DNA of 64,000 nt from Rhodosorus marinus CCMP1338. Its lineage: Eukaryota; Plantae; Rhodophyta. The stretch spans positions 558,001 to 622,000 of the forward strand of contig JAMWBK010000005.1 in NCBI GenBank assembly GCA_029953675.1. Reading direction: 5' to 3'. The notes beneath the pieces are model-generated. The model saw only the letters and a list, made by a program, of their open reading frames with translations. It was not told the DNA's origin and ran no database searches. Below, in pieces: positions 1 through 54,922 of the stretch; the first letter of the stretch is position 1, and each line of letters starts with the position of its first letter. The position numbers and the translations under genes were made by a program.

Positions 1-1724
1 ACAAAATCTACACCCCCCACCCCCACCCCCACCCCGATAGAAGTCAAATCCCCAAAAAACTGTTGTAAACGAGATTTGATACACCCTCAAGATGAGCATT
101 CGAAATGAATGGAAGTGGACTTTAGTATAATAATTTTGAAGAAAACAAACATACCTACCCTGAAGAAATTTTTTCCTGCTGATTTCCGCAAGGCCGCGAG
201 CGATGAGGAAGAGGCATCGACCAATTTTCGAGTTAATTATTTCTGCTTTTCTATTTCCGTGAGTAAGCCCTCTGCTCGGAGTTGACGCAAGCATTTCCGT
301 CAAGTCCCTCGAGACATGTGGCATAAGATCATTGGTCAAAAAAATGGTTTTTTAAAAAACATTTTGCTTGTTTGCCGCGGAGAAAGAAATACGGTATAAA
401 ATATCATTAGGTATTAAGAAAAACGAAACAAAAAATTTCATGGCTTCGATATTGTACCATCGGATGTGTGCTAACGGCTTGGCGTGCCCTGGTGACTGTT
501 GGATCACTGGGTCACATTGACATGGTCCGTTGTGGGGACCAATACTTGATGTTTGCCCAAGGCTTGGGCAAACGTCTAGGTGTCATCTGGTAGATATTGC
601 TTCCGTACGTAGAATTTTTAGCTCGGCTCGACCCTGTAGCGGTGCTCGCGGTTGGATTCAACTGACCCTAGCGGACAATTCCTGGCTGCAGCATAATCTC
701 CCCGTAGCGTTCGCCACCATACCTTCGCACACAGATGATTGTACAAAGCTGCCGCAGATAAATGACCCAGGGTGTTATGGGTATCCGCGTCGATGTCATT
801 TCCCTCTTCTGGTACGACCGATATTCTTCGTGTTCGGTCCATTTGTTTTGAGTAGACTCCGGTTACAGGGTCAAACTCCATTCCTTCAGTCTCCCAACAT
901 CCCAAAGCATCGCACTATTATTTTCCCGCTTCCTCTATACGCCACGGAGCTGCTGAGGCTCGTATGCGAAGGCACAAGGAGATGCGTACGCGGATGCGTT
1001 GACGAATGCACAGCGGAAACCTAACGCATCGTCTAGTCAAGTTGAGTCATTGCGCTTCTGGACGGTATGGGAGCTGCTTAGCTCAAAGACTGCATCGGAG
1101 AGCGCCACTCTGCATGCTACGGTCATTACACGGCTCTGAGCTTTATGCTCTGGCTCATGAACGCCGGCTTGTTGCTTGAAGCGCGTCCTCGGTTGTTCAG
1201 TATTCTCAGGGGAATCCGTCTCTGATAAATGCACTTATCTTGGATTATCCACTCTGGAACGTGTTCCACTAGCCGCTCCGACGACATTAGGTCTACCTTC
1301 GGAAGTCGCGATAATGCATCATCCACGACGTTAATCCTCTTACCGGGACAACCAGCTATTGCGTTACCAGCCAAACTGCTGTATTCCAAAAGCTGAAAAT
1401 CGATAGTATCAGTCAATATCGTTCAGTCATTATGTTTAATTTTGTCCCAGTGTCCCATTGTCCCATTTATGAGAACAGTTAAGTTACCGACGTTGTTAAC
1501 CGGTCGACGGGAAAGAGGATGAGAAAAGGTTCCAGTGCGCGAATGGATTATGTTCCATTTCTGAAGGGGCGGTAAGCTTGTTTTAAGCGTTTTAGAACTA
1601 GCAAAGAATGGAAATTTGAAAAGGAAGTGCCTTGAAGTGGTGGTGGCTGAGAGAAGTGTTCGTTCGTGCTGACGAGCGAGCGCGGGGGGTTTACTGTTCT
1701 TGTTTTGTTTTTGTTCTTCTGGAT

Positions 1725-4700
1725 ATGGCTGTGACGAGGAGGAGGAGGGGGTCTGCTGTTCAGGACGTGGAAAAGCCTGAGGAATCTGGGACTGGTGAGG
1801 ATGAAGAGCTGAGTGAGGTAGAGGAGTCTGTGGAGGATGGGGAGGAGTCGACACTGAAGCCTCGGATTATGGATGAGATGAGCGAAGGGCACGCCGTTGC
1901 GGAAGAGAAGGTCTTGATAGGTGCAGTGTCTGGGGAACATGAAAGCGATGAATACGAGGAGGATTCGGAGTTGGACGACCTCAATAGCAACTCAGACGAC
2001 GAGGACTTTGATCCGGAGGCGCTCGAGAGGATTCAAAATGCTGCTGTTTCAGGCGTACAGAAGAAGCGAAGGAGGGCTGTCGAGGCCCTCGATGTGAGCT
2101 CAAAGGAGGACCCCTTAATGGTCGGATCAGGAAAGAAAAGGGCCACAGTATCTGCGCTTTTAGATGCGTTGGAGGGGAGCGAAGACCTAGGAGGTAGTGT
2201 TGAGAGGGAGCTGAGGAAGTTGAGCGATGGGGGGGTCCTCGAACCAAACCTTGACAAGATCCAATCGCAGCGAATTGAGCGGGATGTAGCTTATGGGAGA
2301 ACAACAGACGTTGTAAGTAGACCTTGTAGTCGAGGGGCGGTCAAACGTACGTGTGGAGAGCTATTAATGACACGGTTTTGATACAATGCGCACAGGTTTC
2401 CAAATGGCAATCGCTTGTCAAGAAAAATCGGGAAGCGAAGCACTTGAAGTTCCCGATGAACGCTCCACCCCGTCAAACCCCATCAACGGCACAGCTGGCG
2501 ACTTCTTACAAGGCCCAGAATGAGACAGAGTTGGAGATTGATAGAATCCTTAAGGAGAGCGGCATGCTCGACGACAAGAAAGCTGCCGCAAGCGAGGACC
2601 TGGAAATGAAAGAGCTCACTAAGGAGGAGGTATGTATCCAACCAAAAGACCAAGTCTAGTATCTGAGAGTGGTTCCTGACCAGCGGGGCTCCTCAACTCA
2701 AACACGAATCTTGGTTGTGGAATCAAAAGGTCGCGGCGCGTAGAGGAGAGCTCCGGAAAATGAAAGCCCTAATGTTTTATTACGAGAAGAAAATGAAGCG
2801 CATCAAGAAAATTAAGAGCAAAGGCTATAGACGAGCACATAAGAAGGAGCGGATGAAGCAAGAAGAACAAGCTGAGAAGCACCGAGCAGAAAATGATGAT
2901 GGTAAGGTGTTGATGCTTAGCGATCAGTATCCAAGCGGAGCTGAGACGAGATTTGAAAGCCGAGTTGGTTTTAGTAGCACAGGAGGATTGCGGGTTTTCT
3001 CCATGATTGATGAAAAACCTGTACTTAAAAATCCCTACCAACTCCTCGTGCTCTTGTTTCCAACGTTTTTACCTGCTCAGATTATGCTACTGAGCGAGCG
3101 ATTGAACAGGAGAGAGAGAGGGCCGAGGAAAGAATGTCTCTTCGTCATAAGAACACGTCAAAGTAAGTTGGTGCTGAACTCGGTCGTTCCATTGCATTAG
3201 TTCGCTCAGCGAACTACGCGTTTTTGACTCCTTGCTTTCGACTAGGTGGATCAAACGCCAAATCATCAGAGGCACTGGAAAGTTCGATCCTGGCTCACGG
3301 CAGGCGATTGCCGAACAGCTCGATGTGGGAGAAAAGCTGAAGAAGAAGCAGAGGCAGAGTTCGATCCTAGAAAGAGGTGGTGAAGAAGAAGATGCTGACT
3401 CTGGTGAAGACGTAGGGATGGAGGAGACCCGAGAGCAGCTTGAGAAGGAGGCTAAGGAAGTGGAGAAGGGCCCATTGGGCGCTGCCAAGAGCAGCTTGTT
3501 CTCTATGAAGTATGTCATTTTGTCGTTCTTTAATACCCGACGCTGTAGTCGCGAATGTGGGTGTTGATACCTGCGTTTCTGGATCTTCAGGTTCATGCAG
3601 AAGGCCATGGAGAAGAGGAAAGACGAGGCACGTGAGCTACTGGGGGAAGTTGATGGAGAGGATCAGGGACAAAGCAAGCCCGTAGTTACAGGAAGAGTGA
3701 AGTTCTCTGAGAAGCAGCCAGACAAGAAGGAGGGGTACGCCCGTGCTTCTGACGACGAAGAAGAAGATGTGGAGGAGAACCTCCGTGCGCGAGTGGACGA
3801 TATGAAATCAACTGAAGAGGCGAATGTTAACGTGGAAGGTATTTTTGCAAGGCAGGACGGCAAGTCCGCGGTTTATGAAATCAAACTCCAACTTTCATTG
3901 TGTTTTTAGAATCCAGCCAGGTTGACATTGTGTCAGCCGGAGCGCAAAGTCGGAAAGGAGTTCAGACTAGACTCTCAGGTCGCTTAAACGTTGAAACAAA
4001 GCAGATGACCACCTCCGACCTCGAGGTGGAGAACACGGATAGGGTGAAGACCAGCCTCATACAGGTACTTTCCAATCTTGCTCAGTCGAAAGCGTCGCTG
4101 ACTTTTCCACCACATCCCCAGGTCGGAAACTCGAACGCTCAGGAGCTGAAGCCGAAAAAGAAGAATCCTTGGTTGACTCTTGATGAACCCCTGGAGCAGG
4201 TGCTCGGCAACAAGCACAGGAACGCTGACGCTATTGAAGCGAGTCAAAAAATTCAGAGCTCGGTTGTGACCGCTTCCGAGCGAGAACGCGCAGCAAATAC
4301 CGCCAAGGAAACGGCAAAGCGGAAAGGCATGGAACTAGTGAAAATGGCCTTTGCCGGGGCAGGCGCGGAGGTAGAAGAATTCAAGAAGGACAAAGAGGCT
4401 GAGGTACGTTGATGAGTTACGGAATGGCCGTGAGTGCGTGCGCTTCACTTACCATGAATTAGCGAATTTCTTTGCCAACAGATCAGCAGCCAGCTGCCGA
4501 AACCTGAAGACACTGTGGCGGTCGTGCTTCCGGGGTGGGGTAGTTGGGAAGGGAAAGGCGTGCGCCATTCCAAGGGGAAGCAGAAGTTCGCCAAGCAGGC
4601 GATGGTAACGTACGAGAAGGCAAAGGAAGACATCATTAAGAAACGCAAGGATACTGTAAGCAAGGCCTGCACTCGGAAGTACGTATCATGTAGATTCTGA

Positions 4701-14940: not shown

Positions 14941-15875
14941 ACCAGACAGGCTGGCAAGCATTGGTGAAGATTGCGCGTTAAGGTGGCAAGGACTTGTAGA
15001 ACAAGGCGTATCCCGACGGGCGTTTTCTCGTGTCCTCCTGTAGCGTGAGAACTTTGGGGATCGAATACATGGGTTGGTCGTGTTTCAGTGTCCTCTTGAG
15101 TTAACCCAGTGGCGGACTTCAACCACCCTTATTCTCGAGGCCAGTTCTTTTGTGCCGTTCGTATTCCTTAGCCCCCAGGGGACTTACGCTCGGAGCAAGC
15201 CGACTGGACTGGCTCTTCGAGTCGCATGATCAGTAGCTTCAGTATTTTGGTAACCACGGGTTGCTTCAAGACATGTGTACCTAAGAATGAACTTGGAGAA
15301 TTCTTGTGCCCCGCAATGCCGATGCTTGTGACATCAAGCTCAGAGGCTGGATGACCCCCTCCGAAGTCCTGTATATGCGAGGAGCAACAAGTACAGTTAA
15401 GGTTGCAGCTATTGAATGATATGCGTTACGGAGCGGTTGCTTGTGAGATCAAAAGGTTCTTCCACTATTAGCATTCGTACATGAGGCTTGAGACTTGAGG
15501 CTTGGTTTATTAAGAACATTACTATGAGTACTGCTAGTCAAAAAATGCCCCCAGAGTTCTCACACCCTATCACAAGATGGTTGGCCACCGCCTTATCTCC
15601 TCTTTCAACCCCTGGCCCTAAGCGATCCTCTTGCACGCACGCTCCTAGTACTTGTTTGGCATGAAGTAATGCACCTTCCGATGATCAAATGCTTGACACC
15701 AAATCTGTCTGTGCGCAGGAGATATTAAGCAGCGCCAGAGATTCAAGTAGACTGTCAAGGAGTATTCCGGTTGGGGCCAACCACGAGCGCCCCAAAGTCG
15801 TTCGTTTTGCCACAACATTCTGAACAGGACCAGCAGCGAAAAACTCCGAAAAGCTTAAAAGAGCCAATGAATTCT

Positions 15876-17131
15876 TCACTGCTCTGGCTGGGTCTGTTTC
15901 GGAAGGTACCTAACCCCGGTTTTACAAAAAGCTTTGGCGTCGCAAGCTGTGCAGTCAGCTTTTTGGGACTGGCAGATGATCTTCCCATGCTGAATAAGCA
16001 AGAGGTGTAAATCATACTTCATATCATCCGGTACCCGCCTGTTTAGAAATTCATAGGTTTCCTCCCTTGTAGCAGAGTCCGGGGTCCAACCAAGGCGCTT
16101 AGAGAGACGATTCACATGCTACCAAGAAAAACAACATGACGAAACGCAACGTTGTCGGCTTAGATTCGCTCTCGACACTCTAATTGGAGACCTGGCGTAC
16201 CGTATCCACGGGAAAATCGTTCCTCTTCAGAGTGAATAGCAACACGCACGAAATTGTCTTTGGTCCAACGCCTTTGAACCGCGATAGTTGTTCCTTGATC
16301 TTCTCGGTGGATTCATTTCGAAGATGCTCAAGGCTTATCTCTCCGTTTCTGCCTTTAATCTCGCGGAAAATGTCCTTGATTCTCTTCGTCTTTATCTTGG
16401 ACAGTCCACCACTTTTGATCGTTTCAGCTACTTCGTCATCGTCGGCGTCCAGGAGTTCCTCCCAGTTGGTGAACCTTTGCTAAACGAAGGGAAAAGTATG
16501 GAGGGCCGGCAACATTGTTAGGCCTACCTCGACTTCTCAGTTTCCCAGATGGTAGTGCCTAACCTTGAGAAGCTGGAAACACCTGTGCGAATTCACATCG
16601 GTCGTATTTTGGGATAGAATAGTTCCCACGAGAGAGTCTACCACGCTATGATCCGATGGTTTATGAGGAATTACCCCGTGCGTGTACTCAAGTGAAGTTT
16701 TGACGGACCGAAAGAGCTGCTCGGTGGGAGCCCAGCTCCTTGACGCCCATACATCCTCGACGTCTACCGGCAGCTTATTTTTCGATTCTGTGTTACTATC
16801 TGCTGTGCATAGAGCTGCATTTAGTACTACTTTCGTCCATATGCCTCTTTCCTGATTGGCTCCATTCGGCAATCATACCGACAACGGAACCCTGTATGGT
16901 TTTCCTCCTCTTTCTGCTCTGCTTCTTTCCGTCAGCTTCATAGACCACTGGCTCCTGTTGAAGGTCGAGCAAGCTCTCATCCTGTTCACTCTCTAGCTGG
17001 GACTCCGACTTTGCGTGTCGTACCAATGTGGCCCTGGGCCGATTTCGCTCTTTGGGATGACGAGCAAAGAACTCCAGAGAGTTGCTGGCCGCTTTTTCTC
17101 CAAGAAGCCTTGTGGATCTTCTCAACGCCAT
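15876..17131 (-). CDS. HhH-GPD / endonuclease III-family DNA glycosylase with 4Fe-4S cluster (resembles the At3g47830-type subfamily)
   Basis: VVDSLVGTILSQNTTDVNSHRCF; KGVGPKTISCVLLF...FPVDTHVNRLSKRLGW (HhH Lys and Asp retained); HGKIICQSQKADCTACDAKAFC (C-x6-C-x2-C-x5-C). Start taken as MALRRSTRLL at 17131. Confidence 0.9.
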
Positions 17132-17426
17132 TGGCGAGATAAAGCCTGCCTTTACATCAGAAGCTCTCCCCATACATTTCACAAGCCGACGCCCTTTGCT
17201 ACCATGCAAACCTGTGGTGTCCCAGCGACCGCTGGATCCGAAGTGTACTTCCTCTACTAATTGGTAACCTGGATTCCACGCAATTTTTTTGTTTTTACTT
17301 GAATCGTTGAGAATGGCACTCAAGGAATATGCCAGACAAAGATTTTTGTTGCAACAACAACGCTGAAAGCCTTAGCAGAGTTTCTCTTCCTTCACTCTGA
17401 AGGCGCCATAACCCCAGGCATCAGCT

Positions 17427-19263
17427 TCAAGCAGCCACTTCGAACAGACTCTTCATCGAGGAATGCGTCTGACCTTCATAGACCCCATCCTCAATACCTG
17501 CAAGGCCAAAGTCTGCTTGGAACGCGAGCAGCGCTTCCTCAGTGTGCGGGCCGAACTGAGTCTGCTCGATAGTTCCCAAGTAGTTGAGGTTGAGGTAGCC
17601 CAAATTCGCCAAGCAGCGGTGGAGCTGCTCAACGTGGTTCCCTTGATCGCCTCGGCGCAGAGGGTGCTGTGGTACGGACGACTGCTGCATTGGAGCCGGC
17701 TCGGTCGCGGTAGGAGCGGCCGAGAAGTGCTGGTTCCAACTAGTCGAACCTTCTCGCGGCCCAGTTTCGTCCTCACCGAAGCCGGAGTACTCTCCCATAC
17801 GGGCAGTCACGGTCCTTAGTAGCGCGCGAATAGCGCTCTCCTGAATAATGAGCTCTGCCGCCGATCCAATCACACCGGCCACTTCTTGAGAGACTAGACC
17901 TTCCACGCTACGTCGTACGTCGGCGGAAAACTGGCGAGACTGCTCCGGCGTTGGCGCTACCGAGGCATCGCTCCCGACCGCACAGTTTACAGCCATGGCT
18001 AGCCTAGGCAGAATTGTCGGCAATGACATTGCCAGCATTGGAAGTTGACCTGTACAGTACCGTTGAATCAGCACACCCATCCTTTAGGCGGACGAAGCAA
18101 GATGGATATCTCTTCTTACCTGAACGTTGTACTGCTGCAGCCGCCTGGGAAATCGCGGCCTGGGCGCCCGGGGACAAGGTTTCCAAATTGCCCATAAGGC
18201 TCTCAATGCCATCGAGATTAAAATTTCCGTCATTGAATCCTGAAAAAGGGCTCGACCATAAGAATGAGCTGAGGGTTACGGGTCGCATGCAGTGGTGGGG
18301 TGGTGGGGCAAGATTCTAGCTTACCAGAGAAGCTATCGCCGAAGTTGAATTGTCCGAGCGGGAACTGGGGGGCCTGTCCGGGATAACTGGAGAATGGATA
18401 GCCGCCCCTAGAGCCTTGATAAGACCTGGCTCGAGGCTCAGTTCCGGGCTCGGTATGTGGCGGAGGCGGGGCCTGTGAAGGTGGGTGTGGTGGTCCAGTT
18501 GGTGGTGGTGGCGGCTCGTGCGGTGGCCCCGATGGTGATGGCGGCGCGTGCGGTGGTGTATGCATGTGTCCTGGTGGCGGCGCGTGCGGTGGTGCGTGCA
18601 TGTGTCCCGATGGCGGTCCATGCGGTGGTGCGTGCATGTGTCCCGATGGCGGTCCCTCCGGTGGCGGTCCATGCGGTGGTTCGTGCATGTGCCCTGGTGG
18701 CGGCCCATGCGGTGGTGCGTGCATGTGCCCTGGTGGCGGCCCATGCGGTGGTGCGTGCATGTGCCCTGGTGGCGGCCCATGCGGCGGTGCGTGCATGTGC
18801 CCCGGTGGCGTCCCATGCGGCGGTGGTCCCCCAGCTCGCTGTTGAACAGGAGCGGGCTTCGGCGGAGGGCCAGCCTTCACATTACCAGCGGAAGCTTCAG
18901 GGTGAGGTCCTTAGCACATGAAACATAGAGCCAATTAGCAAGAGAAAAGACATCAATTCGAAGCTGCCTTATAGGGTATAGTCAGACGGTCTTTCGCTTA
19001 CCCGTATTCCCAGCTTTCCGGACGCTCAACTTCAGGAGACTGGCTCCAGACGACTCCAAAAGCACCAGCGCTTCCTCCAATTCCGAATCCAGCTCGAGAG
19101 TGATGAGATCACCATCATCATCCTTGTACTTCATACCAAATCCCCCTTCCTCCAGGTTGTAGGTCTTCCGAATCTGAGACTGAAGATCCGCGACTCCATC
19201 AACCCGCACGCTGAACCGACGAATATCTCCGTCAAGCTCGCACTTAACCTTCAAATCCTTCAT
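17427..19263 (-). CDS. PB1 domain + His/Pro/Met-rich repeat + C-terminal peptidoglycan-binding-like (PG_binding_1) domain protein, 4 exons
   Basis: Exon 1 is a PB1 domain with the basic Lys (KVKCEL..DIRRF) and the acidic OPCA motif (KYKDDDGDLITLELDSELEEAL). The C-terminal LRRGDQGNHVEQLHRCLANLGY...FGPHTEEALLAFQADFGL...DGVYEGQT fits the PGBD pattern. GT donors at ..AATACGG|GTAAG, ..CTCTG|GTAAG and ..GTTCAG|GTAAG. Confidence 0.85.
18545..18830 (-). repeat. Coding minisatellite, 36-bp unit x7 (GHMHAPPHGPPP)
   Basis: GCATGTG recurs about every 36 bp (one 51-bp spacing) between ~18560 and ~18800. Confidence 0.95.
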
Positions 19264-20577: not shown

Positions 20578-23500
20578 CTAAAATTTCGAGATCGCTTTAT
20601 GCACACAGAGATTAATAGCTTCCGCGATGACTTCTTCATCCGAATGAGTACGGTCAAGGAATGCAGTTATCTTGCGGTAAATTCTTACAGCATCTTTCTC
20701 CATGAAGTCCGGGAGAGTGTTCTCCGTGTAAGTTACTGTACACTCGCGATTGTTCTCCTTGCGATCGACCTCCAAAAAACTACCAGTGATGTTCACTACG
20801 ACCAGGCCTAACTGGGCAAACACGGGATTGACATAAGAGACAAATCTGAATGGCTTCCGTCGTATCAATACCAGACTTACCGTTCGCATGGAAGTATTGT
20901 ACGTAATTGTCACTGGCACTGTTCACTAGAAAGTTGCAGTGGAGTAAGAGAAATTCGTGAAGAACAAGAGCTTGAAACGGCGATACGACATGGTTGAGCT
21001 GATTCTCGAAAGCTCCAAGGCTTTTGCTAAAAAGAAAGACCGGAACAGACAGCATCCTGAACCCCAATTGCTTTGCTCGCCTTTCGAATGTCTGAGTGTA
21101 GTCAGATACAACGTTTCCATCGCACGCGATCCAATTGATGTTGATATGAAAGCAAGTCTCCAAACTGAAAAAGGAGTCGCAGCTCAGCATTATCCACTCG
21201 TTTTCCAAACCCCTAAACGGCTGCATACCGACCATAAACTTCAATGGTTCCTTCGCAGAGTACCCATGGCGCCACGGTAACAAGATCTTACGTCCATTCC
21301 GCATGATCTCAACATGCTCAGGGCTAGTCTTTGTCATCAGCTCAAAGAGTTTGACGAAGTTTGAAAAGATTTCACCATCACCACCTCTCTCCGCTTGAGT
21401 CGGTTCTCCAGTGAGAGGTCCAGGAGCGGCTCTATTGGCGAGCAAAACGAACGAAGCTTTCCGACATATTTCGTGGCTCACGAGGTCCAAGTTGACGTCC
21501 AGTCCGTCAACAAGAATTTGATCCAGCTTGTTCCAATTCACCCTTTCAGGTCCATACTCAAAAACAGTTGAGCGAGCCAGAAACGCGTTCTTGGCCCGTG
21601 ACCATAGGCAGTAGCCATATTGCTGTTTCTTAGATGCAGCTTCGTCGATGCGAACACGCCGTATAACTCGAACTCCACGGGATTCTGGTTCTACGATCAG
21701 CTCATGAAACTGTTCCCCCTTGGTCAAATAAACACTTTTGGTAGCTCTCACTCGTGACAGGTGCGAGATGGCATTCTTATTCTGGGTCTGCTCACCCTCC
21801 GGAGACAAAAAAGTTTCATCCGATATTCCGGTCACGACTTGATAGTCCATGACCATACGTTGACAAATGAGCTCCTTGACCAGAGCAACCAATTCTTCCT
21901 CCTCGGCTGATACTTTTCCCGTTGACAACAGATATCCATACTCTTCAGATCCCCTCACACGCAAAAGATGCTCATCTGGTGTCCACGTTGTAGTTAGTGG
22001 CAAAATGGACGGGTCGACAAATGTCTTCCACAGCGTCTCCTCTGGCAGGACTAGTGGACTGTCGGAGGATTCTCTATCTTCGACGATCATTGCCTTTTCG
22101 TGGTCAGTCGCGTAGAGGTGCGTATTATAGGGTGCCACTCGCACTGAGATGTCGTCGAACTCAGCATCCAAGATCCTCGTCGCGGCGAAACGCGCTAATT
22201 GCTCATTACCGCTGGTGGATCCTCCGCCGCTGAGGTGGTCAATCAATGCTCTCGGGCTCGGGGAGCCCCTCCAGTCCGTCTTCATATGTAATCCCCGTTG
22301 CAGGCTTGAGTCCTTCGAACTTAGACTAGAGTGGGTAATGCGATTGGTGAGACCAAGGTCGTACTTGCCTCGCATGCTCGCAATCGTCCTGCAGTCGATT
22401 AGAGAGTAGAGTGTCCAAGGAAACAAGAAGACACGCGTTAGGTTCCAAGAGTAGAATGGCAACTCTCGCGTGACGGGACGAATTCAATCACACCTTCGGG
22501 AAGGCAAGCCAGCGAGCCTCGAGGTGTTCTGTTGATCCGCACTTCGGGCAAGATCCCTCATCCGAGAGTACTCCGTCATATCTCCCTCCTGTCTGAAGGG
22601 CGAGTAATACTCGTCTCCGTACTCCACGCTTGAGTTTGTGTCGTCTTCCATCATCCCGCGATCCTCGTTGTTCGGAGGACTAGGAGGGACGAATATTGCG
22701 TCATCGTGCTTGCGAAATTCTTTCTGACTGTTCAACCGGATATCCTCCGCGTGCCCATCGTCAAAAAAAGGCACCACAGGCTTTTCCAGAGGAGCTTGGA
22801 GGAGGGCATAGTCGTCAAATCTCTTGCAGCAGAAGCGGATTCGTAACCAGGAATCGGGCACCGTAAACTTCTGAAAGGCCACTTCTTGAACCGTTTCTCC
22901 TAATTGTTCATGGGTTTCACCGGTAACACCCCGGACAGCCTGCTCGACTGGAAACTTGCTGCCAGAAGGCAAACTGGAAATTTCTGAATTATTGCTCCTA
23001 GTCTCAATCAGCTTGAACTCTCTTTCGTCCAGGAAGAGAATCGGGACTTGATGACCAGGTGGACTCGACAATGAAATCGTCTCACAGACTGCGGCACCAG
23101 AACGAATGAGGTCTCAGATTCCGTGGTTGGCCGGCGTTGGAACATTTATGCACCGCACCGGGCAACCTACCCATTCCGGTGTCCAGAAGCCTTCGTTTGG
23201 TAATCTCTGCGAGAAGCTTATCGACTTTCATAACTCCGTTTCCTGCTGTCATTAGGATAATGCTAGTTCCTGTATAGGGAAAGGCCCGATCCATTTTTAG
23301 GTCGTTCCAGTTGTTCAGTGTCAGGTTGAGTGCTTCAAGCGTGTTCCCCTCCATGGCCGACGAAAGAGTCCCATACTCGGAGGAGTGAGCTCCCTTTTCG
23401 CTCTCATCATGGAAGCCACCAGTGGGAGCCCAGTTAACGGTGGAGGGGAAAACTGAAAACTCGTGCTTGATCCGGCGCAAAATCGACGCCGAGTCCTTTG

Positions 23501-39527: not shown

Positions 39528-42278
39528 TGAGATGTGTCTGCGCGACTTGATTCAGTGCTTTGAAGACCGAAAAGCGCGAAAACACGAAACATGCCCGTTC
39601 TCATATTCTCAGGCCCTTGCGTGCGCTCTCAATCTAGAACGTGCCAGCGACTGTTCCAGGTCGCAAGGGGGTGCAAGGAGCAACTGCCTGTGGCTGGGAC
39701 CTAAGTTGTGACCTCTAGCGGAATGAGAACTCAACAGGCTAGAGGTCTTGAAACGACAATTTGGGGCTGTTCTGTGGGAGTTTGACAGAGACTCTTTGCT
39801 GATAGTTTGTACGCCGATCGTCTGTATGAGTATCTCGCCAGCCTCATCGGCCGTCGCCACGGAAATTAGACCAAAAAAACAAAAGAGCCAGAAGAGCGAA
39901 GCTTGACGAGGAGCGGCTCTTCTCCGGCATGTCTTAACCATCAAAAAGGCCTAGCCATTCACTGGCGATGTCGACTGGGTATTCACTCGGTTTACCAAAG
40001 TGTGCCGCGGGAGGTGTATAAAGAAATCCGTGGAGATCACGCGCCAGAAACGAAGAGCATACAAAGTCATCCGTATATGGCACGGTACACAGGTTCTCCA
40101 TCCCAGAAGACCAAAAAATACCGACCCCCGTCAATCCCTCTCCTCAAATAGACTGGAAGAGAAAATCAACAACGAAACATAAGCACATCAAATGGCCAAA
40201 CAAATTTTCTTCTGCTAATTGAATAACGAACGCAACGAGAACGACCGCGTTTAAGAAAGAAAATTCTCACTTTCGTCCTTGATACGCAAATTCATCCCTA
40301 AAGCAAGAACCATTTCTTATGAAAACTACTTTAAATTCATATATAATTCAAATACGTTTGGTCTTCGGCGTATATTCCCAAAAGTAAATAAAAACGAAGC
40401 CTGCTAGAGCTTTTCCCCTCATTTTTAAGAATAAAAAACGTATAGTTCTAAATATGATGGATTTTAATGGAAGGAAAGAATAGTATTTGTTGAATTTATA
40501 GGCTCGGGAATTCGCTTCTTGGTTTTTACAATCAGTGAAACTGTATTTATTCGAATTGTTTTTATTAGTTTAAAAATACGGTGGGTTGTATAGTAAATAC
40601 AATGAAGAGATATCTTGTCGTGACGAAATCCGACTTTTTTATTCCAATATATTGTATATACCCACTAGATTTTTTTACCGCAGTGGTTCGAAACCACCTA
40701 ACTTTGAAGGAACTAAGAAATAATTTTTAAAATAAAGCTGTTCTGAAATTCTTTCGCTTGTCACATAGCAGGGGTGGTAGGTAAGAATAGTCTCGACTTC
40801 TATCTCCAAGTGTAGATCGTCCAGTTCCTCATTTTTTTTGTCTATTCTTATTCCGATTCTCTTTTCTTGACCCGTTGCAAAGTCTTTGCTTTAGTTTTAG
40901 AAAATTTCAACTTTTCTTATATACGAATCTACGGCCAGGCATTGGAGTCTAAGGAGGCGGGGGGGGGTGTTGCCCCAGAGAATAGCTATAGAAAACTATA
41001 CCCCAGGTGTGGAAGACCTTGGTTTTGCGCTAGAATACAAAAAAAGAAATTTAATGACAGAAGAGGAAATCTATTTTCGCTTGCCAGGGGTATAAATGCG
41101 GACAATAATGAAAAACAAATAGAGGGGTGATTTTCTATACTAGATGGATTCTCCTTTTTCAGTTGTGGTGACAAGCAGAGCAGATCACATGCTCCCGAAA
41201 AAGAAGAAGAAAACGAACCACATATCCGAGGATTTGGCAAAATGGCAACAGGAAGCATAAGATTAAATGACCCATCCGGAACAACGGGGGGGGTATAAAA
41301 ATCACAAAACACGTTAATCCGCAGTAATATACCATTTTTCGAAAGTTAGGTGAGAATGTTGGATGTCTTAGGGGGGTAGAATCTGGCAAAATATCGAGCT
41401 CTTTTTTCCATGATTGGGTGAAAATGATACCGCAGAAAGGCTGGAGGATTTCTGTGAGACTCCGTAGGGGGGAGGAACGGATGCTACCTGAAATTGCATG
41501 AAGAGATTCTTACCTGGGAAACAGTTGGAATTGTTTTGAATCATGGAGTGTCCTACGTCAAGGGCTTGTTCAGTAGAACAGTTCCCGAGGGAAGGGGGGG
41601 GTGGTTTACAAGGGTTGATTGAAATAGTGTCTGTTTTCAAGATGCTGACGTTGTTTGAGAAGAGGCGAGAGGGGTGGGGGTGAAGAGTGGTATGAGGATA
41701 GTCACATATGGGAAGGATCTAAGGTTTTCGGACAGAACAAGGATAGAAGGTGGTCGTGGCCGTTGAAAAATTTTGTGAGCTCTGATAAAATGAATTGTCT
41801 TTATCTAGGAAGTGGATGGGGAAAAGTTGGGTGGAGATGACCTAGGTTGAAAGGGACGGGGAAGGGGGGGTTGGTGAAACTGGCCGCGGGTTGGAAGAAT
41901 GGGATTTTGTTCGGTCCAGGGAGGAGGAGGACAAAAAGGATTTTTTTAGGGTAAAGGCAGGTTGTTGTCAACTGGGTCTTTTTCTCTTGGAGGGGGGGGG
42001 GGGAAGGGAGGGTGGGTAAGACAGCTGAGCGGCATTGTAAGTGTTTGGTTGTTTTGCGTGAGCGGTTTGTCTGGTTTTGGTTTTGTTGTTTTTTTTGCAA
42101 TCTTTTTTGTGGCCCAATGACACGAGGATGGTTTCTGCAGGATAGGATTTGAGGAGCCTGGGATGGAGTTTTAGCTAAAGGACTGGTTGACTGGGAGAAA
42201 ACAAAAAACCAGAAAAGGAAGGGATTTGTGTTTGCTTTTTTTTCCTTCTGGTGGAGTACGGAGGAGGAGGGGGGGAGT

Positions 42279-44086
42279 ATGGCTAGACGCTTGGGGACAA
42301 TCGCTTTTGGCGAGGACGAAAGGGAAGCTGCGGACGAGTTTGTACAGGCTTTGACGACGGACTCCCAGACGGAGTCAGTAGCGGAGACAGAAGGCGAGGA
42401 CGAATCTGGGGAGGAAGAACAGGCCCCAAGCAGAGATCAGGACTCTGAGGACGAACTTATTCCTGCGGCGCAGGTGTTGATGCTCCCTCCGGCAGATCAC
42501 TCTGGAATTGAGTCAACTATGCAGAACATCTTCTCGCTGGTACACTCTGGCATTGATTCGTTTACCAGCAGCTATGCATCGTCAGCTCTCGGGAATGAGG
42601 GAGTGATCTCGCAGCTGAAGAGACGCAAGTTCCTGGTCAGCAAGCAGGTCGAGGAGTCTTTTCGTACCTGTCCCCGTGACGTCTTCGTTCCAGACTCGCA
42701 GAAGGCAGTCTCTTATGACATGTCACCGTTGAGATTGACCGAGTACGAGTTCAACATTTCTGCTCCAGATGTGTATGCTAATGCGCTCGAGGTTCTAGAA
42801 TTTAAGGAGGGCGACAGGTTCCTTGATATTGGAAGTGGCTGCGGGCAGCTTACGGCTATGGGGGCAGTGCTCTGTGGGAAGACTGGCAGCGCTCTTGGAA
42901 TCGACTTGAGCGAGAAGACTGTCAGCTTTGCGAGGTCGAACGTTGAGAAGCTTAAAGTCGAAAGCCCGAGATTCGTTGAGAAGGCCTGTGATGTCGAGTT
43001 CATGATTGCCAACGTGTTCCTCCTGGACGTGGAGTCGCTGCCATCGAAGGACAATGACGGACGATTTGATAAGATTCACTGTGGTGCTAGCTGCCCGCCT
43101 AGTCGGCTAAATGCTCTTGTCGCATTACTTCGACCTGGTATGTGTCATGGGTCCCAGCGACGCTTTTCAAAATAGCATTTATCTGACAAATTCTGTACTT
43201 GTGCAGGTGGAAGTCTTGTTACTCCTTGTGGAAAGGTCATGCTCTTGACGAAGAAGCATATGAACGGATCAACGACTCAGAAGAATGTCGCAGCGGTAAT
43301 ATACGGACCGCTGATTGTTCCGAGCGATCTAGAGGTTATAATGCACATGTATAGGCTCTCCATTGGGAAGGCTTCTCGTCTGGAGGGGCATGAGACCATG
43401 ATAGAAGCTGACCTGAACGGCATGGTGGCAGTCGAGGAAGTAAGGGATTTGTTCATGAGCCATGAGGGCAGCGACTTCACTTTTGTCGTTGAAGAGAACG
43501 GAATGGAGTACAAAATTCCAGCCCACAAGGCTATCCTGTCCTCTAGGTCGGGGCATTTTCGTGCCCTGTTCAATTCCAATATGAAAGACTGTGTCTGTGC
43601 GAGCACCACACCCCCAGAAGAGTACAGCAAGGCAGACCTGATAGAGTGTCTGCGATACATGTACACTGAGACGGTGAGTCCTAGAAAACGTTACCTTTTA
43701 CAATGGATGTTTTGGCCAGAGTTATTCCTCATTCGTCGTGTTCAATGCTTTAGGCTAACGTTAAGGTGGAAAACTGCGTGCAGCTGCTACGCCTGTCAAA
43801 GTTTTACGATGTGTCCGCGGGAATCTTTCGACTGTGCGAAGAGGTATTGTACTCCAGCCTGGACACGTCAAATGCAGCTAGTATTCTTCACTTGAGTAAT
43901 TGGTACTCTTGTGAAAGCCTGAAGAACTGTACCACACAGTTCATACTGGACAACCTGGATGAAGTTCGTCGTTCGGAAGATTGGAGTCACCTCGATCGCG
44001 ATGTCGTCGAGGACGTTCTGATAGAGTCCTCGAAACGGAACCACATGATCACTCACCTAATAAACTCTTTTAGCCAGAGTACATGA
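42279..44086 (+). CDS. Protein-L-isoaspartate O-methyltransferase-like (PCMT/PCMTD) domain fused to a BTB/POZ (+BACK-like) domain, 3 exons
   Basis: FRTCPRDVFVP, NISAPDVYANALEVL, FLDIGSGCG (SAM motif I), FDKIHCGAS, LLRPG|GSLVTP and YGPL. These continue into SDFTFVVE...IPAHKAILSSRSGHFRALFNSNMKD...LRYMYT (BTB) and NCVQLLRLSKFYDV...LDTSNAASIL...LKNCTTQFILDNL. Confidence 0.9.
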
Positions 44087-47119: not shown

Positions 47120-48019
47120 TCAACAACGCCTGGACTCAGTCTGCAATCCCGGTCGCACTGCCAGTCCCATCGAAGCGTCAATCACAGCACCATGGAACAT
47201 CTTTGAAGCTGGACTTGTTGACAAATAGAAAATGTTCTCTGCGACATGTGTCGGGGAAATGAGGACTCCTTTAGGCATACCCGCAATAAAGCTATCCGGA
47301 TCGTCGAGTTGGCTCAGTGTACTCTTCTGGAACATTTCAGTCTCAGTCGCTCCAGGTGAAATACAGAAAATATCTACATTACTGTGTACGTTATCGGCGG
47401 CAAGATGCTTGGAAAGATAAGCAACTGCAGCCTTTGACATTAGATCCGCGGCGTGATACTCGGGGAAGACCGCGGCTGATCCTCCACCAACAGAACCGAC
47501 GAAGACAACAACTGTTCTTTCCTCCTGTTTCCGCAACGGAATGAGACCACGGCTCACCCACAAGGGTCCCAACGAATTCACTCTCATTAAAGCCGTATCC
47601 TTCTCAAACTCAGTTGCACCCTCTCCACAGTATGAGTCTACGGTCGCAGACCCCAGGGCTGCGTTGTTAATAATAACATCCACGTGAGGCACTTCAGCGT
47701 CCTCCAACCAAACTTTGGTCTCAGCAACAAACTCGCTAACGCTCTTTTCGTCACCCTGGTCTAGTCGAACCGCCGTCACGTGCACATATTTACTTTTCAA
47801 AGCAGCCACCCCGTCGAGGTTCCTTAGATAAGTAAACAAAACCCTATGCCCTTCCCGCGCGAATTCCTCGACAATGGCCTTTCCAATCCCCGAGCTTCCA
47901 CCAGTGACCACAACATTCAACCTTCTCGCAAAAACCATCGACTCCGGTGTGTCCGGACCTCTCGAGGACAATCTCGAGGAAAAACTCGATGTACTCGCGA
48001 GATCTAGTCGCTCATTCAT
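47120..48019 (-). CDS. Short-chain dehydrogenase/reductase, intronless, non-canonical active site
   Basis: VVTGGSSGIGKAI (TGxxxGIG), IINNAALG, VNSLG, FVGSVGG, ADLMSKAAV, ISPGATETEM, GAVIDASMG. One uninterrupted ORF. Confidence 0.9.
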   Translation of the reverse strand: MNERLDLASTSSFSSRLSSRGPDTPESMVFARRLNVVVTGGSSGIGKAIVEEFAREGHRVLFTYLRNLDGVAALKSKYVHVTAVRLDQGDEKSVSEFVAETKVWLEDAEVPHVDVIINNAALGSATVDSYCGEGATEFEKDTALMRVNSLGPLWVSRGLIPLRKQEERTVVVFVGSVGGGSAAVFPEYHAADLMSKAAVAYLSKHLAADNVHSNVDIFCISPGATETEMFQKSTLSQLDDPDSFIAGMPKGVLISPTHVAENIFYLSTSPASKMFHGAVIDASMGLAVRPGLQTESRRC

Positions 48020-53860: not shown

Positions 53861-54922
53861 TCAGGGTCGGTTTGGGAGTGCCATTACTTTTGCTAATTTC
53901 TTCCTCTCCATTTTTGCCAGTTTCGCACCGTACGATAGTCCGATGTACCCCGCAATATTGTTCGCTAAGTTCAAACTGTCAGCTTCAACACCTCTCTGCT
54001 CAGTATCAAAAAATGATACAACACCTTCGCATTTCCCTGAAACTGCGACTGGAACAGCAAATCCAGTTTGGATACCGTAGCGTGTTGCAGTGCCCGCGCG
54101 AATAAAAACTTCAGGGTTGCTTAGGTTGGTCAGGGTCTCTGCCGCCATGGACTTGTAGACCCTGCCGATGAGCCCCACTCCAGGTTCGAAGCTCACCTTT
54201 CGGCTCGTCTCCTTGAAAAGCTCAACTGAAGAGTAGCCGTTGTCGAAATCAGCACCAATATGCGCACCCTTCAACCTCAATCGCATCACCGAGTCAGTCC
54301 TCGTTACCGAAGTAAGCCACACCTCGGCATACTTCCATCGACGCTTCTTGCACACAAGTTTCATCATTGGGCAAAGAGCCGTGAAGAGACAGTCGGACTG
54401 CTGAACAACTCTGTCCACCCAGGAGAGCATGTTCTTGTGCGAGCTCAGAGCAACTTCCATGTCAAGCGTAATCACCGCCTGCTTGTACTCGCGAATTAGC
54501 CTAAGCGAAGTTTGTAAAATCCTGGACTTCGATTGAGGCTTAGTCGCCGTCTCGGAATCCAACGTCACAACAAGGTCCGTCAATTCCTTGAATTTGTTCC
54601 CTACATTTGCGCGATACTTCCGGGAGTGCTCCTTATGCGCCTGTTTTCTTCCAATCGGCTCGTCGCTGACAGCACTCTGTTCCTCGTCCCTAAGCCTCTT
54701 CTGCCCAATAGCTTCCTTTGAATCATCGCCACTCCCCCTGGAGGGATCACTGTCCGCGAGCAATTGCTCAACATCTGAGTTGGCATACTCAAAGTTGTTC
54801 ACCTCCAAAAACAGCGCCCGCGGATCTTGCCATTCGTTCTTGCTAGGAGCACTCTGTTCCGGAGTCTTTTCCGCGGTCGCGAAACTTACCAGCTCCATAT
54901 CGCCGAAGATTGGTTCGAACAT
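53861..54922 (-). CDS. bHLH-GAF domain transcription factor, intronless
   Basis: Basic/HLH RKQAHKEHSRKYRANVGNKFKELTDLV...PQSKSRILQTSLRLIREY. This is followed by a GAF-like region WKYAEVW...FEPGVGLIGRVY...FIRAGTATRYGIQTGFAVPV...EGVVSFF...LANNIA. Confidence 0.8.
   Translation of the reverse strand: MFEPIFGDMELVSFATAEKTPEQSAPSKNEWQDPRALFLEVNNFEYANSDVEQLLADSDPSRGSGDDSKEAIGQKRLRDEEQSAVSDEPIGRKQAHKEHSRKYRANVGNKFKELTDLVVTLDSETATKPQSKSRILQTSLRLIREYKQAVITLDMEVALSSHKNMLSWVDRVVQQSDCLFTALCPMMKLVCKKRRWKYAEVWLTSVTRTDSVMRLRLKGAHIGADFDNGYSSVELFKETSRKVSFEPGVGLIGRVYKSMAAETLTNLSNPEVFIRAGTATRYGIQTGFAVPVAVSGKCEGVVSFFDTEQRGVEADSLNLANNIAGYIGLSYGAKLAKMERKKLAKVMALPNRP

What the first reader, a model, noticed from the sequence alone, without database searches (positions are those of the whole stretch)
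17427..19263. PB1 polymerisation scaffold fused to a peptidoglycan-binding-like domain
The PB1 domain has both the basic Lys and the acidic OPCA motif, so it can self-polymerise as in p62/NBR1. Where those receptors have a C-terminal UBA domain, this protein has a bacterial-type PG_binding_1 fold. With no signal or transit peptide it should be cytosolic. Hypothesis: an intracellular cell-wall-fragment or glycan sensor that clusters via PB1 filaments, i.e. an algal pattern-recognition scaffold. If the host is a red alga this is doubly odd, because red algae are reported to lack plastid peptidoglycan and core autophagy genes.
Basis: partly seen in the sequence, partly recalled or inferred. Interest (0 to 1): 0.8.

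Follow-up and report, generated by a model that had tools for sequence, protein, structure and literature searches.

The report
Red-algal PB1 scaffold with peptidoglycan-binding-like tail
This is a real, expressed gene of the red alga Rhodosorus marinus whose protein joins a self-assembling PB1 domain to a bacterial-type "peptidoglycan-binding" fold, and it belongs to an undescribed family whose named members are all red algae and which resembles the p62/NBR1 scaffolds of other eukaryotes; its ligand is still unknown.

Summary
A four-exon gene lies on the minus strand (19263 to 17427, three GTAAG..AG introns). It encodes 529 aa, identical to NCBI NDN08_001137 of Rhodosorus marinus. Transcript contigs from close relatives carry one continuous ORF from PB1 to the C-terminus, with an in-frame stop before the ATG. 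So the splicing is real and there is no signal or transit peptide.

Pfam, AlphaFold2 and Foldseek all support:
- a type-AB PB1 (K7, R15/R16, OPCA motif);
- a disordered segment of about 200 aa, mostly Pro/His-rich (GHMHAPPHGPPP repeats);
- a confidently folded helical domain of about 125 aa with no known relative;
- a C-terminal PG_binding_1 fold. This is the most constrained part (dN/dS 0.04-0.10).

New here: the protein belongs to a family of about 30 sequence clusters. Every named member is a red alga (Chondrus, Agarophyton, Gracilaria, Hildenbrandia). The usual architecture is PB1, linker, helical domain, ZZ finger, PGBD. The Rhodosorus lineage has lost the ZZ.

The most likely mechanism is a p62/NBR1/TFG-like polymerising scaffold that presents many copies of the C-terminal binding module. 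I rate it a new variant of a known kind, of moderate interest.

The parts
17427..19263 (-). Whole coding region (ATG 19263 to stop 17427) of the 529-aa PB1...PGBD protein, NDN08_001137 of Rhodosorus marinus
   Evidence: Gene model built. It is 100% identical to the NCBI protein. Splicing is confirmed by transcript contigs L005-L007.
19015..19254 (-). PB1 domain (aa 4-83, in exon 1 = 19002-19263), type AB: K7, R15/R16 and OPCA motif Y46..E61
   Evidence: Pfam PF00564, E 4.7e-12. pLDDT 93-96 with a beta-grasp topology. Foldseek TM 0.74-0.86 to aPKC, NBR1, AtNBR1 and p62 PB1 domains. Family-invariant K7, R16, Y46, D48, D52.
18910..19001 (-). Intron 1 (92 nt, GTAAGC...AG)
   Evidence: The junction matches the transcripts.
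18325..18909 (-). Exon 2 (aa 88-282): disordered region. It holds Pro/His-rich repeats (GHMHAPPHGPPP, 7 GHMH units) and then a G/F/Y/Q/N-rich stretch.
   Evidence: Composition P64 H26 G22 of 159 aa. pLDDT below 60 and no secondary structure.
18537..18829 (-). 36-nt tandem repeat array that encodes the GHMHAPPHGPPP units
   Evidence: Tandem Repeats Finder: period 36, 90-96% matches. Total protein length differs between strains, 529 vs 594, 586 and 562 aa.
18240..18324 (-). Intron 2 (85 nt)
17775..18216 (-). Conserved all-helical domain (aa 291-414), interrupted by intron 3 (18050-18119). No Pfam family and no structural neighbour.
   Evidence: pLDDT 84-96, seven helices. It aligns across the family. 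Pfam found nothing there in 36 members. Foldseek against PDB and BFVD gave no credible match. dN/dS is 0.14-0.28.
18050..18119 (-). Intron 3 (70 nt). The ortholog on L003 appears to have an intron at the same place.
   Evidence: P0007 is an ORF that reads through an insert between ..RASG and QLPMLAMS.
17667..17774 (-). Disordered linker (aa 415-450) at the position where most family members carry a ZZ zinc finger. The ZZ is absent here.
   Evidence: pLDDT 30-40. Alignment A4 shows the ZZ columns empty for this protein and for P0007. Exon 4 is one continuous ORF, and the transcripts also lack a ZZ.
17430..17666 (-). C-terminal PG_binding_1 (PGBD-like) helical bundle, aa 451-529 (Pfam match aa 459-520 = 17457-17642)
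   Evidence: Pfam PF01471, 34.5 bits vs cut-off 23. pLDDT 82-96. Foldseek: SleB N-domain TM 0.81 with rmsd 2.6 A, plus CtpB, SleC and phage endolysin PGBDs. dN/dS is 0.035-0.10, the lowest in the gene.

Best explanation
This is an expressed nuclear gene of the red alga Rhodosorus marinus. It encodes a leaderless, hence presumably cytosolic, modular scaffold protein.

Shown:
- The N-terminal PB1 has both the basic face (K7, R15/R16) and the acidic OPCA face, as in self-polymerising PB1s (p62, AtNBR1, TFG, aPKC).
- A disordered segment of about 200 aa follows, Pro/His-rich and then aromatic/Gly-rich.
- Next come a conserved helical domain of unknown kind and a bacterial-type PG_binding_1 fold.
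- The protein belongs to a family whose named members are all red algae. The canonical architecture is PB1, linker, helical domain, ZZ, PGBD. The Rhodosorus lineage lost the ZZ.

Inferred mechanism: head-to-tail PB1 polymerisation, possibly helped by the sticky disordered linker, produces a multivalent assembly. That assembly displays many copies of the C-terminal helical-plus-PGBD module, so a weak single-site affinity becomes high avidity. This is how p62 filaments use their UBA domains. Here it would work without ATG8, because red algae are reported to lack the core autophagy genes.

The PGBD-like domain is the most constrained part and is probably the ligand-binding end. Its ligand is unknown. 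I rate a protein, peptide or endogenous ligand as at least as likely as bacterial peptidoglycan fragments.
For: - Gene model and expression.
- Domains: Pfam, AlphaFold2, Foldseek.
- PB1 class: K7, R16, Y46, D48 and D52 are invariant and R15, G51 and E61 nearly so in 13 family PB1s. The family PB1 profile hits aPKC-zeta, AtNBR1, TFG and p62 first.
- Family: a profile search found about 30 clusters that match the whole helical-ZZ-PGBD module. Of 36 aligned members, 22 have PB1, 30 have ZZ and 32 have PG_binding_1. Both Chondrus paralogs and the Agarophyton protein are PB1 + ZZ + PG_binding_1.
- Taxonomy: every named member is Rhodophyta.
- Orthology: L003 is colinear with the window, including the downstream HhH-GPD gene.
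- Purifying selection: dN/dS is 0.035-0.10 for PGBD, 0.15-0.22 for PB1, 0.14-0.28 for the helical domain and 0.29-0.75 for the linkers.
- Literature: red algae are reported to lack core ATG genes (PMC11449223, PMC9582228) and plastid peptidoglycan synthesis and hydrolysis (PMC4015805).
Against: - No oligomerisation or binding was measured. Type-AB residues permit polymerisation but do not prove it.
- The tools gave no multimer prediction.
- This protein lacks the ZZ, so the analogy to p62 is weaker for it than for its relatives.
- The PGBD keeps the canonical PG_binding_1 sequence signature, so peptidoglycan binding cannot be dismissed.
- About three quarters of family members come from unlabelled read assemblies. 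Restriction to red algae is therefore shown only for the named ones.
- Absence of ATG8 in Rhodosorus itself was not checked here.
Confidence: 0.55

Rival explanations
1. One reading: a cytosolic sensor of bacterial cell-wall fragments. The PGBD binds muropeptides or peptidoglycan that reach the cytosol, and PB1 filaments cluster the signal, making a NOD-like pattern-recognition scaffold of red algae.
For: The C-terminal domain passes the PG_binding_1 threshold and keeps its consensus positions (GD.G..V..L...L..LGY ... FGP.T..A...FQ...GL ... G.Y...T). Its nearest solved relatives by sequence and fold are bacterial and phage cell-wall enzymes, including SleB, SleC, an L,D-transpeptidase, a DD-carboxypeptidase and endolysins. 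It is the most constrained domain. Red algae are reported to make no peptidoglycan of their own, so any peptidoglycan ligand would be foreign.
Against: There is no binding evidence. The best structural match is a domain of the protease CtpB. From my own knowledge, CtpB uses it for protein-protein contacts, and metalloproteinase prodomains share this fold without binding peptidoglycan. No known signalling output domain is present. In most relatives the PGBD sits directly after a ZZ finger. The ZZs closest to it in the PDB include solved complexes with N-terminal peptides: HERC2 with the H3 tail, PRT1 with N-degrons and p62 with an Arg-Glu peptide. That points to protein ligands.
Confidence: 0.2
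2. A repurposed descendant of an NBR1/p62-type receptor. After red algae lost ATG genes, a PB1-ZZ protein kept its role as a reader of protein N-termini or degrons, feeding an ATG8-independent route such as the proteasome, vacuole or condensates. The PGBD-like bundle would replace the UBA as a protein-binding module. The Rhodosorus copy would be a ZZ-less derivative.
For: To my knowledge the PB1 plus ZZ combination is otherwise typical of p62/NBR1. The family PB1 is closest to AtNBR1, p62, aPKC and TFG. The family ZZ is closest to HERC2, MIB1, PRT1 and p62 ZZs. It keeps the Asp of CD.C and the YDLC motif. No AIM/LIR candidate is present, which fits loss of ATG8.
Against: Neither the FW/NBR1 domain nor a UBA was detected in any member. 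Domain order and spacing differ from p62/NBR1, because the ZZ is next to the C-terminus rather than next to PB1. Common descent was not tested by phylogeny. The protein in this window has no ZZ at all.
Confidence: 0.15
3. A heterotypic adaptor rather than a homopolymer. The PB1 pairs with the PB1 of another protein, such as a kinase or transcription factor, and the rest of the protein recruits a partner. No filaments form.
For: Type-AB PB1 domains such as aPKC also form specific heterodimers, and aPKC-zeta is the top hit of the family profile. In locus L002 a second gene with a closely similar PB1 lies convergent to the family member P0004.
Against: Both faces are conserved across the family. 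That is what homopolymers need. A pure type-A or type-B partner would need only one face.
Confidence: 0.1
4. An annotation artefact: two unrelated genes, PB1 and PGBD, wrongly joined, or bacterial contamination.
For: None was found. This was considered because PG_binding_1 is mostly bacterial.
Against: Three independent transcript contigs carry the continuous ORF. The gene has three spliceosomal introns and lies on a 3.19-Mb contig. The same fusion is present in Chondrus, Agarophyton and others.
Confidence: 0.01

Closest known systems
p62/SQSTM1 (selective autophagy receptor and signalling scaffold)
   Same: An N-terminal type-AB PB1 with the Lys, double-Arg and OPCA residues. A long disordered middle. 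A small helical-bundle binding domain at the extreme C-terminus. Family relatives also have a ZZ finger. p62 PB1 and ZZ are among the closest solved sequences.
   Different: The C-terminal domain is PG_binding_1, not UBA. There is no LIR/AIM. The ZZ is absent in this protein and, in relatives, sits just before the C-terminal domain rather than just after PB1. There is an extra conserved helical domain. The host lineage is reported to lack ATG8.
NBR1 / plant AtNBR1
   Same: A PB1 that forms filaments in AtNBR1. AtNBR1 PB1 is the second-best hit of the family PB1 profile (E 4e-11), with Foldseek TM 0.74-0.80.
   Different: No FW (NBR1) domain, no UBA and no AIM. It is not an NBR1 ortholog by domain content.
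TFG (PB1 plus Pro/Gln-rich disordered scaffold)
   Same: An N-terminal PB1 followed by a long Pro-rich low-complexity region. TFG PB1 is the third-best hit of the family profile (E 1.6e-10).
   Different: As I recall, TFG has a coiled coil and no folded C-terminal domain. Here there are two folded C-terminal domains.
Bacterial and phage PG_binding_1 domains (SleB N-domain, CtpB domain, L,D-transpeptidase 4lpq, DD-carboxypeptidase 1lbu, endolysins)
   Same: The sequence signature and helical-bundle fold.
   Different: Those domains are extracytoplasmic and are attached to cell-wall enzymes. This one has no leader peptide, follows PB1 (and in relatives ZZ) domains, and is found in an organism reported to make no peptidoglycan.

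Membership tests
PB1 domain, type AB (type 1/2) | Pfam PF00564 score above the gathering threshold | tested here: met
   46.1 bits vs 23.6.
PB1 domain, type AB (type 1/2) | Ubiquitin-like beta-grasp fold superimposable on solved PB1 domains | tested here: met
   pLDDT 93-96 with bb-a-bb-a-b topology. TM 0.74-0.86 to aPKC, NBR1, Par6, AtNBR1 and p62.
PB1 domain, type AB (type 1/2) | Both a conserved basic Lys on strand 1 (plus the Arg pair) and the acidic OPCA motif | tested here: met
   K7, R15, R16 and Y46-KDDDGD-...-E61 are present. K7, R16, Y46, D48 and D52 are invariant in the family. The RRF motif aligns to p62.
PB1 domain, type AB (type 1/2) | Head-to-tail homo-oligomerisation | not testable with these tools
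   Needs SEC-MALS or EM, or a multimer prediction.
p62/NBR1 selective autophagy receptors | ZZ zinc finger | tested here: not met
   There is no ZZ in this protein or in the Rhodosorus transcripts. It is present in 30 of 36 relatives.
p62/NBR1 selective autophagy receptors | C-terminal UBA domain | tested here: not met
   PG_binding_1 occupies that position. No member has a UBA hit.
p62/NBR1 selective autophagy receptors | LIR/AIM motif for ATG8 binding | tested here: not met
   The only [WFY]xx[LIV] core is inside the folded PGBD and has no acidic context.
p62/NBR1 selective autophagy receptors | FW (NBR1) domain, for NBR1 proper | tested here: not met
   No Pfam hit in 36 members.
p62/NBR1 selective autophagy receptors | ATG8 conjugation system present in the organism | not tested
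   Only the 64-kb window was available. The literature reports no core ATG genes in red algae (PMC11449223, PMC9582228).
PG_binding_1 (PF01471) peptidoglycan-binding domains | Profile score above the gathering threshold | tested here: met
   34.5 bits vs 23.
PG_binding_1 (PF01471) peptidoglycan-binding domains | PGBD-like helical-bundle fold | tested here: met
   pLDDT 82-96. SleB N-domain TM 0.81, rmsd 2.6 A. CtpB and SleC match with probability 1.00.
PG_binding_1 (PF01471) peptidoglycan-binding domains | Binds peptidoglycan | not testable with these tools
   Needs a sacculus pull-down or muropeptide ITC.
PG_binding_1 (PF01471) peptidoglycan-binding domains | Extracytoplasmic location (signal peptide or attachment to a cell-wall enzyme) | tested here: not met
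   PB1 starts at residue 2. An in-frame stop lies upstream of the ATG in the transcripts. No enzyme domain is present.
Red-algal PB1 / helical / ZZ / PGBD family (defined here) | Conserved helical domain followed by a PGBD, matching the family profile | tested here: met
   The profile matches aa 283-415 (E 2e-47) and aa 410-529 (E 2e-50). See alignment A4.
Red-algal PB1 / helical / ZZ / PGBD family (defined here) | ZZ finger between the helical domain and the PGBD | tested here: not met
   It is absent here, in the ortholog P0007 and in P0084. I read this as lineage-specific loss.

The most novel reading that the evidence does not exclude
Red algae lost the ATG machinery and plastid peptidoglycan. 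They nevertheless kept and diversified a p62/NBR1-derived polymerising receptor in which the ubiquitin-binding UBA was replaced by a bacterial-type peptidoglycan-binding domain. This would be an ATG8-independent cytosolic system that captures or senses bacterial cell-wall fragments (or bacteria) through avidity on PB1 filaments. It would be a previously unknown form of algal innate immunity.
Probability: 0.12. Interest if true: 0.85.

Novelty: new variant of a known kind. Interest (0 to 1): 0.55.

Why it matters
PB1 scaffolds such as p62 and NBR1 are central to selective autophagy and signalling. Red algae are the best-known free-living eukaryotes reported to lack the autophagy core.

A conserved family in red algae pairs a polymerising PB1 (and usually a ZZ finger) with a bacterial-type peptidoglycan-binding fold and a helical domain that has no known relative. 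This offers a concrete handle on two questions. The first is what a p62-like scaffold does when there is no ATG8. The second is what a "peptidoglycan-binding" domain does inside a eukaryotic cytosol with no peptidoglycan of its own.

If the ligand proves to be bacterial wall fragments, it would be a new kind of algal pattern-recognition system. If the ligand is a protein, it redefines the PGBD fold as a eukaryotic protein-interaction module. Both outcomes can be tested with recombinant domains.

Tried and rejected
It returned only 3 hits besides the protein itself. Two of them (P0002, P0004) nevertheless revealed the family.
2. The word-indexed search with the 19-sequence profile A4 returned only the Rhodosorus-clade proteins. 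The exhaustive profile search was what recovered the family.
3. The helical domain (aa 291-414) has no Pfam family in any of 36 members, no PDB sequence match and no credible Foldseek match in PDB or BFVD (the best were globins at probability below 0.2). It stays unassigned.
4. The AIM/LIR scan found no plausible motif.
5. Literature searches for PB1 together with a peptidoglycan-binding domain, PG_binding_1 with PB1, peptidoglycan-binding domain with Rhodophyta, and PG_binding_1 with algae found nothing relevant. The PB1 evolution survey PMC7051960 mentions neither red algae nor this architecture.
6. A chimeric gene model or contamination was rejected on transcript evidence.
7. A secreted cell-wall protein was rejected because there is no N-terminal extension.
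8. A metalloproteinase-prodomain type of PGBD-like fold was considered. No such protein appears among the PDB hits shown; the PGBD matches there are bacterial or phage proteins.
9. A second family member or PB1 gene in the window was sought with six-frame profile searches. None was found.
10. The taxonomy of unlabelled Logan contigs could not be resolved. GC content is uninformative.
Full report
**1. What is at the coordinates**

The interval 17427-19263 is exactly one minus-strand coding region. Its ATG is at 19263 and its stop codon ends at 17427.

I rebuilt the gene from the raw sequence. GTAAG donors lie at 19001, 18324 and 18119. The first in-frame AG acceptors give exons 19263-19002, 18909-18325, 18239-18120 and 18049-17427, with introns of 92, 85 and 70 nt.

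The product is 529 aa. It is 100% identical over its full length to NCBI 'hypothetical protein NDN08_001137 [Rhodosorus marinus]', which UniRef calls a 'PB1 domain-containing protein'. That gene lies on a 3.19-Mb contig. The host is therefore a red alga.

**2. Is the gene model real?**

That test fails to refute.

Three transcript contigs (L005, L006, L007) each carry one uninterrupted ORF. Their C-terminal products P0005 and P0006 are 90% and 84% identical to the window protein, and P0005 carries an MMETSP label. The ORF runs from MKDLKVK.. (MTDLKVK.. in L006/L007) through the Pro/His repeats to ..SLFEVAA*. The sequence across the three junctions matches my model.

In L006 and L007 an in-frame stop lies immediately upstream of the ATG. 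There is therefore no hidden N-terminal extension. PB1 begins at residue 2, with no signal or transit peptide.

A genomic contig from a more distant relative (L003, protein P0007, 41% identity) is colinear with the window from the Pro-rich exon through the downstream HhH-GPD (endonuclease III-like) gene. Its ORF call reads straight through an insert at the position of intron 3.

**3. Domains**

- **Pfam.** PB1 at aa 4-83 (E 4.7e-12, 46.1 bits vs cut-off 23.6). PG_binding_1 at aa 459-520 (E 2.3e-8, 34.5 bits vs cut-off 23).
- **AlphaFold2, full length with a 36-sequence family alignment.** PB1 aa 1-85 has pLDDT 93-96 and a beta-grasp topology. Residues 87-290 are disordered. A seven-helix domain at aa 291-413 has pLDDT 84-96. 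Residues 413-445 are disordered. The C-terminal bundle at aa 450-529 has pLDDT 82-95. The C-terminal half modelled alone agrees.
- **Foldseek against PDB, PB1.** It matches aPKC-zeta and aPKC-iota, NBR1, Par6, AtNBR1 (crystal and filament entries) and p62, with target-normalised TM 0.74-0.86.
- **Foldseek, C-terminal domain.** It matches the SleB N-terminal domain (TM 0.81, rmsd 2.6 A, 28% identity), a domain of CtpB and SleC. In the viral library it matches phage endolysin PGBDs.

**4. PB1 type**

The sequence shows K7 on strand 1, the R15-R16 pair and the OPCA motif Y46-K-D-D-D-G-D-L-I-T-L-E-L-D-S-E-L-E-E-A. The RRFS motif aligns with that of p62.

K7 lies eight residues before R15. The family-conserved Lys has the same spacing to the first Arg in the PB1 alignment and in AtNBR1 as aligned.

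In 13 family PB1 domains, K7, R16, Y46, D48 and D52 are invariant. R15, G51, E61 and L62 are nearly so.

The family PB1 profile finds aPKC-zeta (4.8e-13), AtNBR1 (4e-11), TFG (1.6e-10), aPKC-iota and p62 first. These are type-AB PB1s according to PMC7051960. Both interaction faces are conserved, which is what head-to-tail polymers require. Polymerisation itself remains an inference.

**5. The disordered middle**

Exon 2 encodes seven GHMH-containing 12-residue units (GHMHAPPHGPPP). They come from a 36-nt tandem repeat at 18537-18829.

An aromatic, Gly/Gln/Asn-rich stretch follows (..GGYPFSSYPGQAPQFPLGQFNFGDSFSGFNDGNFNLDG..).

Total protein length differs among the Rhodosorus-type sequences, while the GHMH core is kept in each unit. 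In other family members the linker is 63-449 aa long and of varied low-complexity composition.

**6. A family, and a missing ZZ**

The first search already showed two proteins (P0002, P0004) that match PB1, ZZ and PG_binding_1 (P0004 only weakly for ZZ and PG_binding_1).

I then ran an exhaustive profile search with the C-terminal module against 1.84 billion representative proteins. About 30 clusters matched the whole module in one stretch. The remaining top hits were multi-repeat PGBD proteins that matched only the PGBD columns.

Of 36 aligned members, 22 have PB1, 30 have ZZ and 32 have PG_binding_1 by Pfam. Nothing else recurs. Some members that lack PB1 are probably truncated ORF calls.

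The named members are:
- Chondrus crispus XP_005718433 and XP_005712059, both PB1 + ZZ + PG_binding_1;
- Agarophyton chilense;
- Gracilaria domingensis KAI0564437, annotated 'putative peptidoglycan binding protein';
- Hildenbrandia rubra.

All are Rhodophyta. The rest come from unlabelled read assemblies, so restriction to red algae is shown only for the labelled ones.

The canonical architecture is PB1, variable linker, helical domain, ZZ, then about 25 residues, then the PGBD. Many members end in a ..VPPTAA tail.

The Rhodosorus protein, its ortholog P0007 and one other member (P0084) lack the ZZ. In Rhodosorus the corresponding 36 residues are disordered and lie within a single continuous exon, and the transcripts agree. 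I read this as lineage-specific loss.

In two members the helical domain is present in two or three copies, so it behaves as an independent module.

The family ZZ is closest to the ZZs of HERC2, MIB1, PRT1 and p62. The PDB entries for HERC2, PRT1 and p62 in that list are complexes with N-terminal peptides.

**7. Constraint**

I compared the window gene with the two transcript orthologs by the Nei-Gojobori method.

| Region | dN/dS |
|---|---|
| PGBD | 0.035 / 0.097 |
| PB1 | 0.146 / 0.222 |
| Helical domain | 0.143 / 0.282 |
| Disordered region | 0.291 / 0.366 |
| Second linker | 0.452 / 0.748 |

The PGBD is the most strongly conserved part. This argues that it is functional and probably the business end.

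**8. How it most likely works**

*Shown:* a leaderless protein with a type-AB PB1, a long disordered spacer and two folded C-terminal domains. It is conserved in at least four red-algal lineages outside Rhodosorus.

*Inferred:* PB1 head-to-tail assembly yields a multivalent scaffold, and the C-terminal helical-plus-PGBD module binds a ligand with avidity. This is how p62 filaments use weak UBA domains. The Pro/His and aromatic-rich linker may add condensate-forming or metal- and pH-responsive behaviour.

Red algae are reported to lack core ATG genes (PMC11449223, PMC9582228), and no AIM is present. The scaffold would therefore not act as an autophagy receptor.

**9. The ligand question**

In favour:
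- The domain is of the bacterial type, not the metalloproteinase type.
- It keeps the PG_binding_1 signature.
- It is strongly constrained.
- Red algae are reported to have lost peptidoglycan synthesis and hydrolysis (PMC4015805), so any peptidoglycan would be foreign.

Against:
- There is no binding evidence.
- The top structural match is a domain of the protease CtpB. From my own knowledge, CtpB uses it for protein-protein contacts.
- In most relatives the domain sits next to a ZZ of the peptide-binding kind.
- No signalling output domain is present.

I put the sensor reading at about 0.2. I treat 'ligand unknown, with a protein or endogenous ligand at least as likely' as the working position.

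**10. Comparison with known systems and novelty**

It works like p62, NBR1 and TFG-type PB1 scaffolds. It is not a member of the p62/NBR1 receptor family, because ZZ (in this protein), FW, LIR and UBA were all tested and not met.

It is a member of the PB1 and PG_binding_1 domain families by score and fold.

The combination, the helical domain and the family as a whole appear undescribed in the searchable literature. Four targeted searches found nothing relevant. The PB1 evolution survey PMC7051960 does not mention red algae or this architecture. The public records are 'hypothetical', 'unnamed' or generic domain labels.

I rate it a new variant of a known kind.

**11. Verdict**

Interest is moderate at 0.55. 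It is a clean, conserved and unusual architecture in a lineage where it bears on two known absences (autophagy and peptidoglycan), but no functional evidence exists yet.

Noticed in passing
window 18537-18829 (minus strand, exon 2): A 36-nt tandem repeat encodes GHMHAPPHGPPP units, with three His and one Met per 12 residues. Protein length differs among the Rhodosorus-type sequences (529 vs 562-594 aa), but the GHMH core is kept in each unit. This suggests a metal-binding (Cu/Zn) or pH-responsive role for the linker.
   Followed up: partly
alignment A4 (family C-termini); window protein ends ..SLFEVAA (17430-17450): Many family members end in a conserved extreme C-terminal tail ..(S/Q)(G/V)VPPTAA-COOH. 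The Rhodosorus clade ends ..VAA or ..VAAA. A conserved free C-terminus suggests a recognition motif, perhaps for a PDZ-like or tail-specific protease or a C-degron. One CtpB structure among the fold hits (4c2g) is a complex with a peptide ending Val-Pro-Ala, which may be coincidence.
   Followed up: no
alignment A4, ZZ columns (relatives only; absent in the window): The family ZZ keeps the CD.C and DLC..C pairs. The second Cys of the middle C..C pair is replaced (C.N[RV]), and there is no downstream His pair. The second zinc site of canonical ZZ fingers therefore seems to be lost.
   Followed up: partly
P0032 and P0046 (family members): The unassigned helical domain occurs in two and three tandem copies before the ZZ-PGBD. 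It therefore behaves as an independent, duplicable module.
   Followed up: partly
window 15867-17323 (minus strand): The downstream neighbour is an endonuclease III-like (HhH-GPD) gene with several exons. The same gene follows the ortholog on contig L003, so synteny is conserved.
   Followed up: partly
window 20780-22462 (minus strand): The upstream neighbour is a 560-aa ORF that matches the DEPDC5 C-terminal region (E 7e-7). DEPDC5 is a component of the GATOR1 nutrient-sensing complex that acts on TORC1. It is probably one exon of a larger gene.
   Followed up: no
L002 3430-4269 (minus strand), convergent with family member P0004: A 279-aa protein has what looks by eye like an N-terminal helix-turn-helix region and a PB1 (..KMKVSFRGDIRRLWF...YMDDEGDWVRLSSDTELSHAIENAGDGLLRLEMVP) very like that of its neighbour P0004. 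It may be a duplicated PB1 or a hetero-oligomerisation partner.
   Followed up: no
window 42228-43175 (+), 47120-48196 (-), 53861-54961 (-), 1632-2381 (+): Other ORFs in the window match, in that order, a PCMT-type methyltransferase, a short-chain dehydrogenase, a bHLH transcription-factor domain and (weakly) Utp14. These are ordinary eukaryotic genes with no evident link to the finding.
   Followed up: no
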